Notes: generated by a model from the letters alone, not told the origin. A DNA stretch of 63,746 bases, filler included, from Octopus bimaculoides (GCF_001194135.2; 6 parts of 5 records of this genome joined end to end with filler, not necessarily neighbours in it), one strand, 5' to 3'. Shown: positions 26,341 through 42,383, numbered from the whole stretch's first letter. Translations and numbers: made by a program.

Positions 26341-26617
26341 GTAAGTATGGTCCTTCTTTCACTTTTTATACAGCAGTCTTTATTTAACCTCATTTTTTTT
26401 TTTCCATCTTTTCCTTGTTTCTGTCATTAGACTGTGGCCATGCTGGGGCACCACAGAGAAGGTTTTAGTTGAAGGGATCGATCCCAGTACTTATTTTCTT
26501 TCTTTTAAGTTGATAATCCACCACTGTGATTATTTTATTGACATTGGAAGGACAGTTGACATAAGCGTAAAAGGAAGTAACCAGGAGCAAAGGGCTATAA
26601 TTTACTCAAAGTATATA

Positions 26618-26744
26618 CAGGGTGTCCACAAAGTCTGGGTACATGGAGTAAATAAAATCGTAACATAAACAATTAAATATAAGAAATAATAATTTCTTAA
26701 AGTATGTATTAATCCTCATGTACCCAAACTTTGTGGACACCTTG
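26618..26744. mobile_element. Tc1/mariner-type MITE (127 bp) in TKT intron
   Basis: TIR CAGGGTGTCCACAAAGTCTGGGTACATG / CATGTACCCAAACTTTGTGGACACCTTG, TA flanks. Confidence 0.9.
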
Positions 26745-26762
26745 TATAGTTTTTTTTATTGT

Positions 26763-26996
26763 GTCTGGGGAGAGTCATTCTCTTTTAGTGTGTTATTACT
26801 TAACACACACGCTGGTTCGATTTCCACTCATTTACTTATTTATTTTTTCTAAAATTTCCCTTGTGTCTTGCAACCTCTTCAATAGTCTGCAAGGCACAAT
26901 GAAAATTTTAGACAAATAAATAAGTAAATGAGTGGAAATTGAGCCAGTGTGTGTGTTAAGTAATAAGGCACTAAAAGAGAACGACTCTCTCCAGAC
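26763..26996. repeat. Near-perfect foldback (about 110-bp arms, about 15-nt loop) in TKT intron
   Basis: GTCTGGGGAGAGTCATTCTCTTTTAGTG...TTAACACACACGCTGG... is the reverse complement of ...CCAGTGTGTGTGTTAAG...CACTAAAAGAGAACGACTCTCTCCAGAC. Confidence 0.88.
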
Positions 26997-27506
26997 TCAA
27001 CAAAATATGCTTCAACACACGAATTCACATAAAGAATCTTGCAAACCAAATAGAAAAGTGAAATATTTTTTTAGTTTGCAGCTTTAGACTTCTTAATTCT
27101 CTCTCTCTACATACACACACGTGCATGCATGCACGTGCGCACACACACACACACACCCTGGCTTTTGCACAGTTTGTGTAGCAAATTGCATTATTCCATT
27201 CACAAGACCATAGCCAGTCTGAGACTGGTAAAGAATCATTTGACAGAAGCAATTTTGCAGTGAGATGGAATTTGGAAACACGTGGTTGTACAATGATCTA
27301 ATTAATTACATGACTATCATTATCTTCATCATAATATCCATTTTTCTATGTTTGGATGGGTCAGACAGATTTTATATGGCCGGATGCCCCTGCTTGTTGT
27401 CAACCCTTGTCTGTTTCCAAGTAAGCTGTTATTCCTTTGATGCCAAACCTGTTTTTGCAGAATATTGGAAATAAATGGTCGTCATTTACAAGTAGTGTCC
27501 AGACAA

Positions 27507-30948: not shown

Positions 30949-31062
30949 GTTGCCACCCGAGCAGCTTATGGTACGGCACTGGTGAAGATAGGCAAAAGCT
31001 GCAAATATGTGGTGGCCATGGATGGAGACACAAAGAACTCAACTTTCTCCCAGACTTTCATG
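30949..31062 (+). CDS. TKT: Transketolase coding exon
   Basis: 114 nt; VATRAAYGTALVKIGKSCKYVVAMDGDTKNSTFSQTFM (ATR.AYG and DGDTKNSTFS motifs); AG/GT flanks. Confidence 0.97.
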
Positions 31063-33330
31063 GTAAATATCCAAACAAAAATAAAACATGTTCTTTTATT
31101 CTTTCATTTGTTTCAGTCATTTGACTATGGCCATACTGGAGCACCACCTTTAGTCGATCCCAGGACTTAATCTCTGTAAGCCTAGTACTTATTCTATTGG
31201 TCACTTTTGCTGAACCGCTAGATTACGGTTATGTAAGCAAACGAATATTGGTTGTCAAGCGATGTTGTGAGAACACAGACACACACACACATATACATTG
31301 ACTGCGGCTATGCTTGAGCACCACCTTTATAGTCGAGCAAATCGACCGCAGAATGTATTCTTTCTAAGCCCAGTACTTATTCCATCAGTCTTTTTTGCCA
31401 AACCGCTAAGTTATGGGGACACAAACACACCAGCATCGGTTGTCGGACACACAAACACACACACACATGAGATGGGCTTCTTTCAGTTTCCGTCTACCAA
31501 ATCCACTCACAAGGCTTTGGTCGGCCCTAGGCTATAGCAGAAGACACGTGCTCAAGGTGCCACACAGTGGGACTGAACCTGGGATCATGTAGTTGGGAAG
31601 CAAGTTACTTACCACACAGCCACTCCTGCGCCTGGCTACTTATGTATTTACATATTTTCAAGGATTTCAAGTCCAAGGTACCTTGACCCTTTATTGTAAA
31701 GTAGCAGTCGAGTAACTGCTTCAAAATATATTTAGGGGTGATGCATGAATTGTATCTATCCTGTTATTTGTACAATGTTTTATTGGGTTTTCAGGTTTAA
31801 CCTTTTAAGGTTCAGATTACTTAGTTAAGTGAAGGGTGCATGGCTCAACGGAAGTGTCATTCTCACAATCATGAGGTTGTGAGTTCGATTCCTGGACCAG
31901 GCTGTATGTTGTGTTCTTGAGCAAGACACTTTATTTTCACGTTGCTCCAGTTGACTCAGCTATTGAAATACGTTGTGATTCACTTGTACCAAAGCTGTAT
32001 CAGCCCCTTTGCCTTTCCCTTGGATAACATTGACGGCATGGAGACGGGAGGCTGGTATACATGGGCAACTGTTAGTCTTCTATAAACAACCTTGCCTGGA
32101 CTTGTGCCTCGGAGGGGAACTTTCTAGATGCAGTCCCATGGACATTTATGACCAAAGGGTCTCTTTACCCTTAGTTTGTCAAATGCAATACTTATTTATT
32201 CACATTGTTTTGAATGAATCAAGAATTATCTTGAAACTTCGAAATTTTGATGATGTGATTCTTTATTTCTAAAATGACATTGTAGGGTCTGTGTGAGAGG
32301 TTGGATCTAGCCCAGTTGGAACATAAAATGGGTAGAATATTTGGGCTGAATTTCACTGGGTTAAATGCTAAAGGGTTTAGGTGGGTTCAAAATGTATTTA
32401 CAGGTGTGTTTGACTCGGTTATGGTGAGTGGGCCTCAGCACTCTTAAAATCAGAGAACGTTGCTAGCATGTTCAGAGCAAAGGTGATATGGATCTCCTAT
32501 ATGGTACACCCAATGCTCTTCTCAGGCTTGTATCACTGACCAAAGTTGTTGTTAGTCGAAAGTTACATCCCAGGAACTGTCTGATATGGTTCCTGTTCAG
32601 GGGCTTGTCCTGTGAGAAAGTAAGGGTTGAAATTTTTTCATAGGCTGGTCATGTGTCTTGGCTTTGAAAGTAGTTTTCAAAATATAAGGGTTTTTACCGT
32701 GTGTGCTTAGGAAACCTGTTTCTCAGCCATGTAGTTTTGGGTTCAGTCCCACTGTATGGCACCTTAGGCAAATGTCTTCTACTGAAGCCCTGGGCTGACC
32801 AAAGCCATGTGAGTGGATTTGGTGGACAAAACCTGAAGAAAAGCCTTTTGTGTGTGTGTGTGAGTGTACCCTTGTGTTGACATCTCATGATGGCTATAAA
32901 TGAGCATCGCTGTCATACGAGCAAACTTGTTCGTTTCCAGTCTTCTGTAGAAGAATATCTCTGGCTACGGGAAATATTATTTTGATTGTAAATAGATTGT
33001 CGTTGGAATTGTACTCTTTTAGTCATTATCCAACATTCCTGACCCATAGGTGAGGAAAAGCATGAAAATTAAATTGAAGATAATAAGTTTGGGTTTTTTT
33101 TTTTTTTTTTTTTTACCAACATCTCCTCCTCTCCTGACGATCAAATTCTGGGTCTAATGCATTACTGTTCCAGCACCTGCAATTCTAGCACCCAATCCAG
33201 CTTCCTGGTTCCCATCACCCAAAGAATACAGTCTCAAGATACTTAAACTTTTTCGTTTGCTGCCCTTTGTTCCTCCTTGTCCTGGTTTTTGTAGCAATTA
33301 ATTTAATGTCTTTTTCTTTGTTATTTGCAG

Positions 33331-33538
33331 AAAGCCTTCCCAGATAGATTTATTGAGTGCTACATTGCTGAACAGAATCTTGTGGGTGTCGGCATTGGAT
33401 GTGCCTGTCGCAATCGTGCTATTCCTTTCATTAGCACATTCGCTTGCTTCCTTTCAAGAGCTTTTGACCAAATCCGGATGGGAGCAATCTCTCAGACTAA
33501 TGCTAATTTCTGTGGTTCCCATGCTGGCATATCTATTG
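33331..33538 (+). CDS. TKT: Transketolase coding exon (pyrimidine-binding domain)
   Basis: 208 nt; [69 protein letters not shown]; AG/GTAAGT flanks. Confidence 0.98.
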
Positions 33539-34641
33539 GTAAGTCCCTATTTTTGTCCATGTTTATTTGACTGACTAGATTCCTTTATCTGACTGATTTC
33601 ATTTTATTACTGTATCAGTGACTGTATCGATAGGGATATCATAACAGTATTGATTGGGGCTCTTTCTTCCACTTTGAGGCACTTTGGGCAAGTGTTTTCT
33701 TCCATACTCATATGGGTGGAATTGGTAAATAGAAACTGGAAGAAGCGGCGAGCTGGCAGAAACGTTAGCATGCCGGGTTGACTTTGCCTTTCATCCTTTC
33801 GGGGTCGATTAAATAAATACCAATTACGCACTGGGGTCGATATAATCGACTTAATCCGTTTGTCTGTCCTTGTTTGTCCCCTCTATGTTTAGCCCCTTGT
33901 GGGCAATAAAGAAATAAGAAACTGGAAGAAGCCCATATGAGTTGAATTAATAAATGGAAACTGAAAGAAGCCCATAATATGTGTGTAAGACTTCGTATCC
34001 TTATCTGGATATCACTTAATGGTTGTAAATGAGCATCGCTATCATACTAGCAGTGTTGTTCATTTTCAGTCTTCCTAGAAAAGCATGTTTGGCCATAAGG
34101 AAATATGTATGTCCAAAATAGGATAATTTGGACAATGTACGGAGCAATAAAGAAGATAGTTGTCTTTGAGATGTTGATCTTTTGCAGATTGGGCAGAATA
34201 AACTGGAATGGTAGGGAGATACATTGATGTTATTAATTCATTATTTATCGATGTTTGTAGTGATTTGGACTTTTATAAATTTGAATATTTTATTGAATAC
34301 TCCAGTTTTTGTTGGATTTGTCATCATCATTTAATGGCCATTTTCCATGCTGGTATGAGTTGGACGGTTTGACAAAAGCTGGTAAACTGAAGAGTTTCAC
34401 TAGGCTCCAGTTGTCTGCCTTGGCATGTCTTCTATGGTAGGATGCCTTTTCTATTGCCAACCATTATGCAGAGTGTAGTGGGTGCTTTTTACATGGTATC
34501 AGCAAGGGTGCCTTTTACGTAGCGCCAATATTCATTTGAAAACTGATGGGGACAGATGTTGTAAACTAATCAACTAAGATTTAGTTCACAAGATTTAATA
34601 TAAATGCTTTAATTTCGTTTCCTTTTCACTCTTCTGAACAG

Positions 34642-34856
34642 GTGAAGATGGTCCATCACAGATGGCACTTGAAGATATTGCAATGTTTCGTAGTATTCCT
34701 GGTTCCACCGTCTTTTATCCCAGTGATGCTGTCTCTTGTGAACGTGCCATAGAATTGGCAGCAAGAACAAAAGGAATTTGCTTTATTAGAACCAGCCGAC
34801 CAAGTGTTCCTGTCATCTATAAAAACGATGAACAGTTTAATGTTGGACAAGCCAAG
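34642..34856 (+). CDS. TKT: Transketolase coding exon (last visible)
   Basis: 215 nt; [71 protein letters not shown]; GT donor 34857. All nine exons join in phase with no stop (1384 nt). Confidence 0.98.
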
Positions 34857-35439
34857 GTCAGTGCCATTTAAAATCTCAATTGAGGCCCTCTCCACTTCCA
34901 AATTATTAATATGTCATATCTCTCAAGGGACATTAAGCCATTAATAAACATGTTTTATTTGACTTGTATTATTTATTAATTGGTTAACCATTTAACCAAT
35001 CAACTAATTGATTTCTTAATTGTTTGGTGACTCAGTCATTCAGTTAGGTTTGTCATTGTTCTTCCATTGCCATTTGTGACCTCATTAATGACATACCCCT
35101 CTCTATTCCGGGCCTGCTTCAAGGCTGCTTTTGTTCTTAGTATAATCACACCTTCCCCCAGATAAAACAATGAACTTTATTGTATACAGTGCTCAAATGC
35201 GCTACAGCTTATGAGAAAAGGTAACCAAAAGTGCATGTACGGTACATAGAAAATGAACAGTGAATGAGTCATTAAAAAAGGTGAAAGGTGGGCATCAGGT
35301 GCAGTGTAGGTAAATTTCATGAAAAACGGTAGTTTTGAAGAACATAGTACTCTGACTGCTAACAATTAATGTTGGTAGTTTATTCCGTGTTTCAGCAATT
35401 TTAAGCATGAGAATATGTTTCTGAAAGTCTGGAACCCAT

Positions 35440-38357: not shown

Positions 38358-38840
38358 GAGGGAGAAGTGTATAGCATGTATATATGTATGTACTTACAGA
38401 CATGTTTACATATAGACATAAACATACACAAACATACTGAAATGTATACACGCGATATAATATGGATATACATACCCCATGCATACAAATACATACACAT
38501 ACGAACACACATTACGAACATACATACCTACATATATACATACATACACATACATATATACTTATATATATATATATATACATACATACATACATATATA
38601 NNNNNNNNNNNNNNNNNNNNNNNNNNNNNNNNNNNNNNNNNNNNNNNNNNNNNNNNNNNNNNNNNNNNNNNNNNNNNNNNNNNNNNNNNNNNNNNNNNNN
38701 NNNNNNNNNNNNNNNNNNNNNNNNNNNNNNNNNNNNNNNNNNNNNNNNNNNNNNNNNNNNNNNNNNNNNNNNNNNNNNNNNNNNNNNNNNNNNNNNNNNN
38801 NNNNNNNNNNNNNNNNNNNNNNNNNNNNNNNNNNNNNNNN

Positions 38841-38886
<46 letters not shown>

Positions 38887-39313
38887 TGTATTTGAATTGC
38901 GCTGTATTAAATCAAAAGTTGCACATCAAAATTTGAAGAGGAGAAGCATAGATATATGTCAGAAAAATCCAATCTTGTCGTATTGATTGGAACGATCGAT
39001 AGGTGGGTGGATATTGCAATTGATGGAAAGAACGGAAACTATCTTTTATTTTTACATGCTTCAGTCATTTCACTGCGGCCATGCTGGAGTAACAGCCATG
39101 AAGAATTTTTTGTCCAATGAAAAAAAAGGATAAAAAAGTGAAGTTCCTTCTCGAGTCATTTAGACTCACAAGGTCATATAGACTCACAAGGTCATATAGA
39201 CTCACTTCCCGGGTTCCATGGTGTATACATTCTCCACCTGGACAGGACGCCAGTCTTTTGCAGGGTTACTCATTTTTGCCAGCTGAGTGAACTGGAGCAA
39301 CATGAAATGAAGT

Positions 39314-39749
39314 AATAATACATTTCTAAATCTCTCAGAGTGATTTATGCAGTAGTGATACGATGAAGTAGTTGTATGCTGTCAACTTAATGTGACAGTC
39401 CTCTGATGGGAATAATACTACGTTTGGTTAGACCTAGGAAGCTGCACCGCTTCCTGTCGGCCGTGACACATTTTCTGAGTCCTTATGTTTATAAGGGGGA
39501 GACAAGTACCTCCACCCAGCTAAGCCTGCATTCAGAGACATGTTTTTGATGATGAGCAACGACTCAGAAACATGTCTCTGGATGCAGGCTTAGCTGGGTG
39601 GAGGTGCTTGTCTCCCCCTTATGTAAACATAAGGACACAGGAAATGTGTCAAGGTCGACAGGAAGCGGTGCAGCTTCCTAGGTCTAACCAACAGTAGTAT
39701 TATTCCTTTCAGGGGACTGTCACATTAAGTTGACAGCATACAACTACTT
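39314..39749. mobile_element. Insertion with 13-bp TSD containing a 390-bp inverted repeat (possible Penelope-like remnant), nested in a SINE
   Basis: CATGAAATGAAGT at 39301-13 and 39750-62; arms about 39363-39549 and 39564-39752 differ by about 12 substitutions and one 2-bp indel (hand alignment); host SINE resumes on both sides. Confidence 0.85.
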
Positions 39750-40548
39750 CATGAAATGAAGTGTTTTGCTCAAGAACACAACTCCGGATCCAGGAATACG
39801 AGCCACTGTCTTACGAACATGTGTCTAACACCCTCACCACTAAGCCATCCGTGTCTAATATTTATTTTTTCTTAAAGCCTGGTACTTAGTCAATCAGTAT
39901 CTCTTACCGAAGGTTGTAAACACACTAACATATATATATATAACGTGAATGAATAAGAATTTGAAATCCAGGCAGGTACATTTTGAGCACTCTGATGGAA
40001 TCCAGACTTGGCTAACCATATCGAATGATAGGAAACGTTTAGAATCGTTTAAGATAAGCGTTTAAACTGTAAATCCGGAGTTCGCTTCAGTGGATTTCAT
40101 TACAGCATACAAAGGATATAAATAAGACGTTACAAAGAAGATTGGAGAATTATACACCTTCAAAATGAACGAAAGCTTCGGGGGAGATCTGGTCAACTAC
40201 ACCCCTTCGAGGCGATACCCAGGCATGGCCGTCGTCCAATGAATGAAACAAGTAGAAGATAAACAATTATTATCTGTAATCATTTGATCGTGTGATTTTG
40301 TTATGAAGTGTTGACAGAAAATATTTGCAGAAAAACATCGCGAACGCCATTTGCAAATCCAAAATTTAAGGGAAGCAAAATCATGCAAGATTTTTGTAAC
40401 TTCAACATTTAACTCTTTATTGTTCTGTAAATCGAAATCCTAATAACGGAGAGTTGTTTCTTAAAAACAAGCATTTCCTTTTGAAGAAGATTTTAAAGAA
40501 AATGGAAGGAAAATACACTCATATATACATATACACATGCATAGACAC

Positions 40549-41208: not shown

Positions 41209-42383
41209 NNNNNNNNNNNNNNNNNNNNNNNNNNNNNNNNNNNNNNNNNNNNNNNNNNNNNNNNNNNNNNNNNNNNNNNNNNNNNNNNNNNNNNNNNNNN
41301 NNNNNNNNNNNNNNNNNNNNNNNNNNNNNNNNNNNNNNNNNNNNNNNNNNNNNNNNNNNNNNNNNNNNNNNNNNNNNNNNNNNNNNNNNNNNNNNNNNNN
41401 NNNNNNNNNNNNNNNNNNNNNNNNNNNNNNNNNNNNNNNNNNNNNNNNNNNNNNNNNNNNNNNNNNNNNNNNNNNNNNNNNNNNNNNNNNNNNNNNNNNN
41501 NNNNNNNNNNNNNNNNNNNNNNNNNNNNNNNNNNNNNNNNNNNNNNNNNNNNNNNNNNNNNNNNNNNNNNNNNNNNNNNNNNNNNNNNNNNNNNNNNNNN
41601 NNNNNNNNNNNNNNNNNNNNNNNNNNNNNNNNNNNNNNNNNNNNNNNNNNNNNNNNNNNNNNNNNNNNNNNNNNNNNNNNNNNNNNNNNNNNNNNNNNNN
41701 NNNNNNNNNNNNNNNNNNNNNNNNNNNNNNNNNNNNNNNNNNNNNNNNNNNNNNNNNNNNNNNNNNNNNNNNNNNNNNNNNNNNNNNNNNNNNNNNNNNN
41801 NNNNNNNNNNNNNNNNNNNNNNNNNNNNNNNNNNNNNNNNNNNNNNNNNNNNNNNNNNNNNNNNNNNNNNNNNNNNNNNNNNNNNNNNNNNNNNNNNNNN
41901 NNNNNNNNNNNNNNNNNNNNNNNNNNNNNNNNNNNNNNNNNNNNNTTATGAGCTAGTTTTATACATACATACATATATATATATACATATATATGTATAT
42001 ATATACATTTACATACACACACACACACACATTTCATCTTCTCTATGTTAAAGAAATACACGTGCTGGTGTACATATTTCTAACGTGACAGATATTTAAA
42101 ATCCAACATTCACATCGAAATGTTGGACTTTTTGGGAACTAACATTGCAGATGCAACAATAACAAAAAGAAAAGAAAAAAACCTTGAAGTAAACACAATA
42201 CAAGGCTGACTGGGAAGGAGATGAATAATGGAGGAGGCGCTAATGTAATGGAAACTTCAGGAGAGGCTAGAAAATCGAAATTGTTTCCCTGAGTATATGA
42301 GAGCGTTTGGGTTTTCGACGATATGTGTGTGTGGATGTGTGTTTTCAGTTCTATGTGTGTATGTTTTGATTTCATCATGCTTA

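What the first reader, a model, noticed from the sequence alone, without database searches (positions are those of the whole stretch)
39301..39762. 390-bp hairpin insertion with a hammerhead ribozyme core at its apex
Seen: a 13-bp direct repeat flanks an insertion into a SINE. The insertion is 49 unique bp plus two ~187-bp inverted arms. The apex reads TTGATGA (39546-52), TGAG-CAACGA-CTCA (helix II), GAAA (39567-70), palindromic ACATGT, then C (GTC, 39574-76). Established: minimal type I hammerheads with a palindromic helix III occur in the pseudo-LTRs of Penelope-like elements, which often show inverted pLTR arrangements. Inference: this is a Penelope/retrozyme pLTR folded back at the ribozyme, using CTGA/TCAG microhomology; the right arm implies the first T of the core was a C. 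As written, this copy lacks C3 and helix I, so it is probably inactive.
Basis: partly seen in the sequence, partly recalled or inferred. Interest (0 to 1): 0.72.

Follow-up and report, generated by a model that had tools for sequence, protein, structure and literature searches.

The report
Decayed Penelope-type inverted-repeat retroelement insertion
A 436-bp piece of mobile DNA that landed inside another repeat is built like the head-to-head insertions made by Penelope-like retrotransposons and carries a broken hammerhead-ribozyme motif at its fold; it is an inactive relic of a known kind.

Summary
A 13-bp duplication (39301-13 / 39750-62) brackets a 436-bp insertion in a tRNA-derived SINE, and a second SINE copy in the window shows the uninterrupted site. 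The insert is 49 unique bp, a 187-nt arm, a 14-nt loop and a 189-nt inverted arm.

The hammerhead-like string sits at 39546-39576: UUGAUGA, a 4-bp stem II, GAAA, palindromic ACAUGU, then C. Under a strict descriptor it is the only hit in the 24-kb piece (0.0017 expected per shuffle).

It lacks C3 and stem I, has U-A instead of G10.1-C11.1, and no Rfam hammerhead model matches it.

The anatomy fits published Penelope-like element (PLE) insertions: pLTR-sized head-to-head copies, a palindromic junction, a "tail" on one outer end only, and a variable-length duplication. As in Poseidon of Anolis, core nucleotide A9 is the A of an AUG.

There is no RT/GIY-YIG ORF in the insert or within about 5 kb. 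No other copy of the family could be retrieved, so family-level tests are open.

Best reading (about 0.6): a dead, extremely 5'-truncated PLE-type double insertion, ribozyme inactive. This is a known kind, of low to moderate interest.

The parts
39301..39313 (.). Left copy of the 13-bp target-site duplication CATGAAATGAAGT
   Evidence: Present once in the uninterrupted paralogous SINE copy.
39314..39362 (-). 49-nt one-sided extension ('tail'): the 3' continuation of the left (minus-sense) copy beyond the point where the right copy ends
   Evidence: No counterpart at the right end and no similarity to arms or flanks. G-poor (14% G), and it repeats the arm-end motif ACTACTKCAT. Interpreted by analogy with the PLE tail.
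39363..39549 (-). Left arm: element copy whose sense strand is the minus strand; 5'-truncated at UCAG
39546..39549 (.). Junction microhomology (C>T)TGA, shared by the end of the left copy (rc of TCAG 39564-67) and the start of the right copy (C3-A6 of the core)
   Evidence: Read directly from the sequence. T46 pairs with G67 as G.U.
39546..39576 (+). Hammerhead-like core remnant: U(C3 position)-UGAUGA, stem II UGAG/CUCA with loop CAACGA, GAA, A15.1-CAUG-U16.1, C17. Predicted cut site is after 39576. No stem I 5' strand.
   Evidence: Only strict-descriptor hit in the piece. No Rfam hammerhead match.
39550..39563 (+). 14-nt hairpin loop; belongs to the right (plus-sense) copy
39564..39752 (+). 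Right arm: element copy in plus sense. Its 3' end lies at 39749-39752 (CAT shared with the duplication). It contains four or five short local stem-loops.
39750..39762 (.). Right copy of the 13-bp target-site duplication
39155..39860 (-). Host tRNA-derived SINE (approximate limits): A box rc of 39837-47, decayed B box about 39787-39804, 18-bp tandem repeat at its 3' end (39155-39205)
   Evidence: ARAGORN finds no intact tRNA.
31908..31961 (-). Paralogous SINE fragment that shows the empty site
34641..34859 (+). Context: last transketolase exon seen in the piece (others at 30949-31059 and 33325-33543). The C-terminal domain exons are not in the piece, so the hairpin probably lies in the following intron, in the sense orientation of the plus strand.
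   Evidence: Absence of C-terminal exons: (inference).

Best explanation
This is a dead insertion made by the enzymes of a Penelope-like retroelement (PLE). It consists of two extremely 5'-truncated copies of the same roughly 200-nt 3'-terminal (pLTR-type) RNA segment, joined head to head. That segment came either from a PLE itself or from a PLE-dependent non-autonomous element.

Shown:
- a 13-bp staggered target duplication and an empty paralogous site;
- two inverted copies whose outer ends are the element's 3' ends;
- one copy running 49 nt further 3' than the other;
- a junction at a 4-nt self-complementary overlap, CTGA/TCAG, flanking a stem-loop.

Inferred mechanism:
1. The GIY-YIG endonuclease nicked both strands 13 bp apart.
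2. Each 3'-OH primed reverse transcription of the element RNA at one of two internal start sites 49 nt apart. The bottom strand started at ...ACUUCAU, with 0-3 nt of overlap (CAT) with the target. The top strand started at the distal site, with no homology, which left the one-sided 'tail'.
3. The two cDNAs have the same sense, so they can pair only where the RNA is locally self-complementary.
4. Their 3' ends, ...CTGA-3' and ...TCAG-3', flank hammerhead stem-loop II. They annealed there and were filled in, producing the hairpin.

Self-priming (snap-back) of a single cDNA at the same microhomology is the alternative route. It explains the tail less well.

The hammerhead motif is a passenger of the copied RNA. 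The right copy starts exactly at C3, so stem I was never included. C3 has since become T. The motif cannot cleave.

Today the locus is only a 187-bp inverted repeat, probably inside a transketolase intron. There it would fold into long double-stranded RNA in the pre-mRNA.
For: Target duplication and empty site.

Arms of 187/189 nt match the pLTR sizes of 181-218 bp reported for Adineta vaga Penelopes. [quoted passage not shown] The same anatomy is generalised in PMC8557442.

Purified Poseidon protein from Anolis cleaves and extends both strands. It starts reverse transcription at two adjacent internal sites not homologous to the target, and the tail is the stretch between them, a signature 'unique to PLEs' (PMC11167929).

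Hammerhead-like motif: 10 of 11 core nucleotides, a Watson-Crick stem II, a palindromic ACAUGU helix III and GUC. It is the only strict hit in the piece (0.0017 expected per shuffle). Its sense agrees with the right copy, and it lies upstream of the 3' ends, as in PLEs.

A9-U-G forms an ATG (39552-54) with the cut site 25 nt from its A. In Poseidon_Ac the core is nt -6..+1 of the ORF and the cut site is at about +30.

There is no poly(A) or microsatellite 3' tail and there are no terminal inverted repeats at the true termini.
Against: - No RT or GIY-YIG coding sequence in the insert or in stop-free segments of at least 45 aa between 34.6 and 42.5 kb.
- No reading frame stays open through the arms. 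The A9-UG frame closes after 14-15 codons in both copies, unlike autonomous Poseidon or A. vaga pLTRs, which include the ORF start.
- No Rfam hammerhead hit at any threshold.
- 10.1-11.1 is U-A, whereas G-C is 'highly conserved' in PLE hammerheads.
- The tail is 49 nt against 30-40 nt published.
- Core plus stem II alone arises by chance: about 12 independent metagenome matches to CTGATGATGAG-N4-8-CTCAGAAAC, all in coding DNA.
- Only one copy was available, so family membership is untested.
Confidence: 0.6

Rival explanations
1. Solo copy or inverted dimer of a non-LTR retrozyme. These are small non-autonomous hammerhead-bearing repeats, mobilised by PLE enzymes and normally tandem and expressed as circular RNA. 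On this reading the segment is not a piece of an autonomous PLE.
For: The motif looks like a canonical type I hammerhead: a 4-bp stem II with a 6-nt loop, and a 2-bp helix III with a 2-nt palindromic loop. The arms are non-coding in all frames. Cut site to distal 3' end is 225 nt, inside the 150-450 bp unit range. Retrozymes are related to PLE pLTRs and occur as dispersed monomers.
Against: No tandem direct copy here. The unit boundary and stem I cannot be closed from tail to core. Single-arm RNA is only mildly structured, z = -2.5. This rival shares the integration mechanism with the best explanation and differs only in the template.
Confidence: 0.2
2. Retrocopy made by a LINE-type reverse transcriptase, either from a hairpin transcript or by snap-back of the cDNA. 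On this reading the hammerhead-like string is a chance (TGA)n-type match.
For: A 13-bp duplication is also typical of LINE target-primed reverse transcription. Reverse transcriptases self-prime. UGAUGA is common (weak C-box snoRNA hits only). There are spurious relaxed hits in the piece and chance matches in metagenomes.
Against: No poly(A) or microsatellite 3' end. Twin priming gives inversions of adjacent, not identical, segments (established knowledge of L1). The one-sided 49-nt extension is not expected. The strict motif is improbable in 436 bp, 3e-5.
Confidence: 0.12
3. Miniature inverted-repeat (MITE) or foldback DNA transposon moved by a transposase.
For: It is a long inverted repeat. 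Real MITE-like hairpins exist in the same piece (26613-26750 and 26754-27005).
Against: The true termini (AATAATAC... / ...CAACTACTT) are not inverted repeats, because the inverted repeat starts 49 nt inside the left end. A 13-bp duplication fits no common DNA-transposon superfamily (established knowledge).
Confidence: 0.05
4. Assembly artefact or a local palindromic duplication unrelated to transposition.
For: Palindromes can be created by long-read chimeras or by fold-back repair.
Against: The arms differ at 12 sites plus an indel. The insert is precisely bounded by a duplication inside a SINE with a demonstrable empty site. There is no donor sequence nearby.
Confidence: 0.03

Closest known systems
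Penelope-like element insertions with inverted pLTRs, e.g. Pen2a_Av and relatives of Adineta vaga (PMC3846280); general PLE anatomy in PMC8557442
   Same: Head-to-head inverted copies of about 180-220 bp. A palindromic or overlapping junction (15-bp overlap there, 4 nt here). A short extension on the 3' end of only one inverted pLTR. A flanking duplication of variable length. Heavy 5' truncation.
   Different: No ORF and no direct pLTR between the inverted copies: this is the bare inverted pair. Tail 49 nt rather than about 31-40. Duplication 13 bp rather than 8-10. The arms carry no open ORF start.
Poseidon_Ac (PAc) of Anolis carolinensis, the biochemically studied PLE (PMC11167929)
   Same: Order of features along the RNA: hammerhead core, cut site, first RT start, tail, second RT start. 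A9 of the core is the A of an AUG. Both target strands are used as primers. No homology is needed between target and RT start.
   Different: Distances are longer here: cut site to 3' ends is 176 and 225 nt, against about 55 and 90 nt. There is no sequence similarity. The ORF is closed. Target nicks are not at an ATT motif. The region is G-poor but not clearly AC-rich.
Type I hammerhead ribozymes of metazoan PLEs and retrozymes (PMC4209133, PMC7229834)
   Same: UGAUGA and GAAA boxes. A 4-bp stem II. A15.1-U16.1 closing a palindromic CAUG, which allows dimeric helix III. GUC cleavage triplet.
   Different: C3 is U. No stem I. 10.1-11.1 is U-A, not G-C. No unpaired nucleotide after A9. Below every Rfam hammerhead model.
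L1 twin-priming inversions
   Same: Both target strands prime cDNA. The junction forms by microhomology. A duplication of 10-20 bp is made.
   Different: Twin priming joins adjacent, non-identical segments and keeps a poly(A). Here the two arms are the same segment, each with its own 3' end outward.

Membership tests
Penelope-like element (insertion product) | Single ORF with telomerase-like RT and GIY-YIG endonuclease | tested here: not met
   The 436-bp insert has no ORF longer than 47 aa. Pfam finds only a transketolase exon in stop-free segments of 34.6-42.5 kb. This is expected for a copy truncated to about 200 nt, so it excludes an autonomous copy, not PLE origin.
Penelope-like element (insertion product) | pLTR-type repeats in direct or inverted order; inverted copies head to head with a palindromic junction | tested here: met
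   Arms of 187/189 nt with 3' ends outward and a 4-nt overlap at the junction, compared.
Penelope-like element (insertion product) | Optional 30-40 bp 'tail' on one end only, lying between two internal RT start sites | tested here: inconclusive
   A one-sided 49-nt extension is present. Whether it is the continuation of the element's sequence needs other copies.
Penelope-like element (insertion product) | Target-site duplication of variable length | tested here: met
   13 bp, with the empty site shown.
Penelope-like element (insertion product) | Multicopy family whose full-length members carry the same terminal sequence | not testable with these tools
   No other copy in the piece. Nothing in metagenome, viral or prokaryotic collections beyond chance 20-mers. 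The source species is absent from the protein collections.
Hammerhead ribozyme, type I | Core boxes C3-U-G-A-N-G-A9 and G12-A-A14 | tested here: not met
   The GAA box is intact and UGAUGA is intact, but position 3 is U (39546). C is inferred as ancestral only from the G.U pair with 39567.
Hammerhead ribozyme, type I | Stems II and III with A15.1-U16.1 and H17 | tested here: met
   UGAG/CUCA; A-CAUG-U; C17. However, 10.1-11.1 is U-A instead of the conserved G-C.
Hammerhead ribozyme, type I | Stem I formed by the strand directly 5' of C3 and the strand 3' of the cut site | tested here: not met
   Upstream of 39546 lies the inverted arm (ACAUGUUUU), which is not complementary to UCUGGAUG.
Hammerhead ribozyme, type I | Score above the threshold of a curated covariance model | tested here: not met
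   No hammerhead family at the gathering threshold, nor at E<=10 on 701 nt or 65 nt.
Hammerhead ribozyme, type I | Self-cleavage | not testable with these tools
   Needs in vitro transcription.
Non-LTR retrozyme | Tandem direct repeats of 150-450 bp units, each with a type I hammerhead | tested here: not met
   No direct tandem copy. Solo monomers are known, however.
MITE / foldback DNA transposon | Terminal inverted repeats abutting a duplication of family-specific fixed length | tested here: not met
   The inverted repeat starts 49 nt inside the left end, and the termini are not complementary. The duplication is 13 bp.

The most novel reading that the evidence does not exclude
The locus may be a minimal natural record of double-strand-primed PLE integration. 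Each nick would have primed cDNA at one of the two RT start sites. The two like-sense cDNAs would have been joined at the only nearby self-complementary hinge, the hammerhead stem-loop II. That would give the ribozyme's stem-loop a structural role in forming inverted pLTRs, independent of cleavage.

In addition, the intronic hairpin may be tolerated or kept as double-stranded RNA in the transketolase pre-mRNA. All 7 transition differences between the arms keep G.U pairing in the plus-sense RNA (p = 0.016).
Probability: 0.12. Interest if true: 0.5.

Novelty: new member of a known kind. Interest (0 to 1): 0.27.

Why it matters
As a single decayed copy it matters little: it is an inactive transposon relic.

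Its value is as a clean, fully bounded example, with duplication, empty site, both 3' ends, tail and junction all readable. It fits the 2024 in vitro finding that a PLE protein primes on both target strands and starts at two internal sites.

A genome-wide census of such bare inverted pairs could do three things:
- map RT start sites in an invertebrate PLE family;
- show whether junctions prefer the hammerhead stem-loop;
- provide a hammerhead family for testing.

Long intronic inverted repeats are also candidate substrates for RNA editing or small-RNA production.

Tried and rejected
1. Rfam on the whole piece at gathering threshold, and on 701 nt and 65 nt at E<=10. No hammerhead. Only generic miRNA-hairpin hits (best MIR4374, 76 bits against a threshold of 105) and sub-threshold C-box snoRNA hits. 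I regard these as hairpin and UGAUGA artefacts.

2. Other copies of the arm:
- none in the 24-kb piece;
- the 20-mer CCACCCAGCTAAGCCTGCAT gave 0 hits in metagenome contigs and 0 in viral contigs;
- it gave 3 hits in prokaryotic genomes that do not extend beyond the 20-mer, so they are chance.

3. Searching the arm's longest stop-free translation in the protein collection, in the hope of ORFs called on other copies: no candidate.

4. Identifying the organism through transketolase exons. Best identity is 81-85%, to unnamed marine sequences. The nearest named hit is a crinoid at 74%. The exon ORF is not on record. The species stays unknown, and I could not verify my impression that the SINE looks cephalopod-like.

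5. The pattern CTGATGATGAG-N4-8-CTCAGAAAC in metagenomes: 20 loci, all acidic coding runs, none a ribozyme.

6. tRNA origin of the arms: ARAGORN is negative, and the A/B-box resemblance is too loose to use.

7. Closing a retrozyme circle, tail to core, to form stem I: no complementarity.

8. ADAR editing as the source of the G.U-type differences: 4 of the 7 G sites have a 5' G, which ADARs disfavour (contexts). Not supported.

Full report
OBSERVATION

CATGAAATGAAGT occurs at 39301-39313 and again at 39750-39762. Between the two copies lie:
- 49 nt found nowhere else in the insert or flanks (39314-39362);
- a 187-nt arm (39363-39549);
- a 14-nt loop (39550-39563);
- a 189-nt arm in inverse orientation (39564-39752), whose last three bases (CAT) coincide with the start of the right repeat.

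The arms differ at 12 positions and one 2-bp indel. As one strand, the insert folds into a single hairpin of -340.9 kcal/mol, z = -35.

The flanks belong to a tRNA-derived SINE on the minus strand. Its A box TGGCTTAGTGG is the reverse complement of 39837-39847. A second copy of that SINE, at 31908-31961, aligns across the insertion point with only one copy of the 13-mer. So this is a true insertion of 436 bp with a 13-bp target-site duplication.

THE APEX

On the plus strand, 39546-39576 reads U-UGAUGA / UGAG-CAACGA-CUCA / GAA / A-CAUG-U / C. All invariant hammerhead positions are present except C3. Stem II is a 4-bp Watson-Crick helix, helix III is short and palindromic, and the cleavage triplet is GUC.

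Evidence that this is more than chance:
- Under a strict descriptor this is the only match in the 24-kb piece. Dinucleotide shuffles give 0.0017 matches per piece, or 3e-5 per 436 bp.

Three caveats:
- A relaxed descriptor also hits a (TGA)n run and an AT-rich stretch (3 hits against 0.04 expected).
- The 20 specified bases of core plus stem II occur about a dozen independent times in metagenome contigs, always in acidic coding runs.
- No Rfam hammerhead model reports anything, even at E<=10 on 65 nt.

Further departures from a working ribozyme:
- The strand that should form stem I is missing. Upstream of the core lies the inverted arm.
- 10.1-11.1 is U-A, whereas G-C is called highly conserved in PLE hammerheads (PMC4209133).

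The motif is therefore a plausible relic of a hammerhead. It is not a demonstrable ribozyme, and it is certainly not an active one.

WHAT THE INSERT IS

The anatomy is independent of the motif, and it is what points to a Penelope-like element.

Published PLE insertions are heavily 5'-truncated. They often carry an inverted 5'-truncated copy head to head, and a 30-40 bp tail at one end only (PMC8557442). In Adineta vaga:
- pLTRs are 181-218 bp;
- the inverted pLTR overlaps its partner by 15 bp;
- palindromes sit at the inverted junction;
- duplications are 8-10 bp (PMC3846280).

Purified Poseidon protein from Anolis cleaves and extends both target strands. It starts reverse transcription at two adjacent internal sites that are not homologous to the target. 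The tail is the stretch between those sites, a signature said to be unique to PLEs (PMC11167929).

The present insert matches this pattern:
- two roughly 190-nt copies with their 3' ends outward;
- one copy 49 nt longer at its 3' end;
- a 4-nt overlap (CTGA/TCAG) at the junction;
- a 13-bp duplication;
- no poly(A).

In Poseidon_Ac the hammerhead core occupies nt -6 to +1 of the ORF, so A9 is the A of the start codon, and the cut site is near +30. Here A9-U-G is also an ATG (39552-54), and the cut site is 25 nt from its A.

Against a simple equation with an autonomous PLE:
- that frame closes after 14-15 codons in both arms, and no frame stays open through the arms;
- no RT or GIY-YIG domain is found in the insert or within about 5 kb.

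The template was therefore a non-coding or already degenerate pLTR-type RNA. It could have belonged to a PLE-dependent non-autonomous element (retrozyme-like). The tandem arrangement that defines retrozymes is absent here.

MECHANISM (INFERRED)

1. Two nicks 13 bp apart each primed cDNA synthesis on the same kind of RNA.
2. The bottom strand started at ...ACUUCAU, with up to 3 nt of overlap with the target.
3. The top strand started at the distal site, with no homology. This left the tail.
4. Two cDNAs of the same sense can pair only where the RNA is self-complementary. Their 3' ends, ...CTGA and ...TCAG, flank stem-loop II of the hammerhead.
5. Annealing there and fill-in give exactly the observed hairpin, with its 14-nt loop.

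Self-priming of one cDNA at the same microhomology was proposed for PLE palindromic junctions in PMC3846280. It gives the same apex but does not explain the one-sided extension.

Both copies run through the predicted cut site, so the template was uncleaved RNA. This agrees with the in vitro result that cleavage is not needed for insertion.

T46 faces G67, the hammerhead's G12, in the hairpin.

RIVALS

- A MITE is excluded by the asymmetric termini and the 13-bp duplication.
- A LINE-made snap-back retrocopy with a chance motif cannot be excluded (about 0.12). It is disfavoured by the missing 3' tail repeat, the one-sided extension and the improbability of the motif.
- An assembly artefact is unlikely, given the diverged arms and the clean duplication.

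WHAT COULD NOT BE DONE

The decisive evidence is other copies of the family, and the source genome is not in any searchable collection here. The arm occurs once in the piece. DNA scans found nothing beyond chance. The translated-ORF trick failed. The transketolase exons of the window have no relative closer than 81-85% in the protein collection, so even the species remains unknown.

CONTEXT AND SIDE OBSERVATIONS

The plus strand carries transketolase exons at 30949-31059, 33325-33543 and 34641-34859. No exon of the C-terminal domain is present in the piece. The hairpin therefore probably lies in the next intron and would be transcribed in plus sense.

All seven transition differences between the arms are of the kind that leaves a G.U pair in plus-sense RNA. 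None leaves A.C (p = 0.016). Without an outgroup copy this cannot be assigned to selection, strand-biased mutation or cDNA deamination. The sequence contexts do not favour ADAR.

VERDICT

This is most likely (about 0.6) a dead, extremely truncated head-to-head PLE-type insertion with an inactive hammerhead relic at the junction. That makes it a new member of a known kind, of low to moderate interest.

Noticed in passing
39402/39713, 39408/39707, 39460/39655, 39474/39641, 39507/39606, 39532/39581, 39546/39567: All 7 transition differences between the two arms give G.U, never A.C, when the plus strand is read as RNA. Equivalently, every one is a plus-strand C>T or A>G (two-sided p = 0.016). The plus strand is also the sense strand of the surrounding transketolase gene.
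   Followed up: partly
26613-26750: Mariner-like MITE with terminal inverted repeats TATACAGGGTGTCCACAAAGT... / ...ACTTTGTGGACACCTTGTATA. One of the spurious relaxed hammerhead hits (26718, minus strand) lies inside it.
   Followed up: no
26754-27005: A second, unrelated hairpin repeat directly next to the MITE: 105-nt arms, 87% complementary, 42-nt loop. Its boundaries and duplication were not resolved.
   Followed up: no
39155-39205: An 18-bp tandem repeat GTCATATAGACTCACAAG (2.8 copies, 96% matches) at the 3' end of the host SINE.
   Followed up: no
30949-31059, 33325-33543, 34641-34859: Three plus-strand exons of a transketolase gene (pyrimidine-binding domain). The best database identity is only 81-85%, and the exons of the C-terminal domain are not in the piece.
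   Followed up: partly
39549-39596 and 39572-39697: Two short ORFs start inside the hammerhead-like motif: ATG-ATG at A6-G8/A9, and ATG in the helix III loop. Both are closed by stop codons shared by the two arms, so the stops predate the insertion.
   Followed up: yes
38601-38840 and about 41209-41959: Runs of N (assembly gaps) flanked by TATG/TATC/CA microsatellites. The 169-nt 'inverted repeat' reported at 38554-38891 is an artefact of the N run.
   Followed up: no
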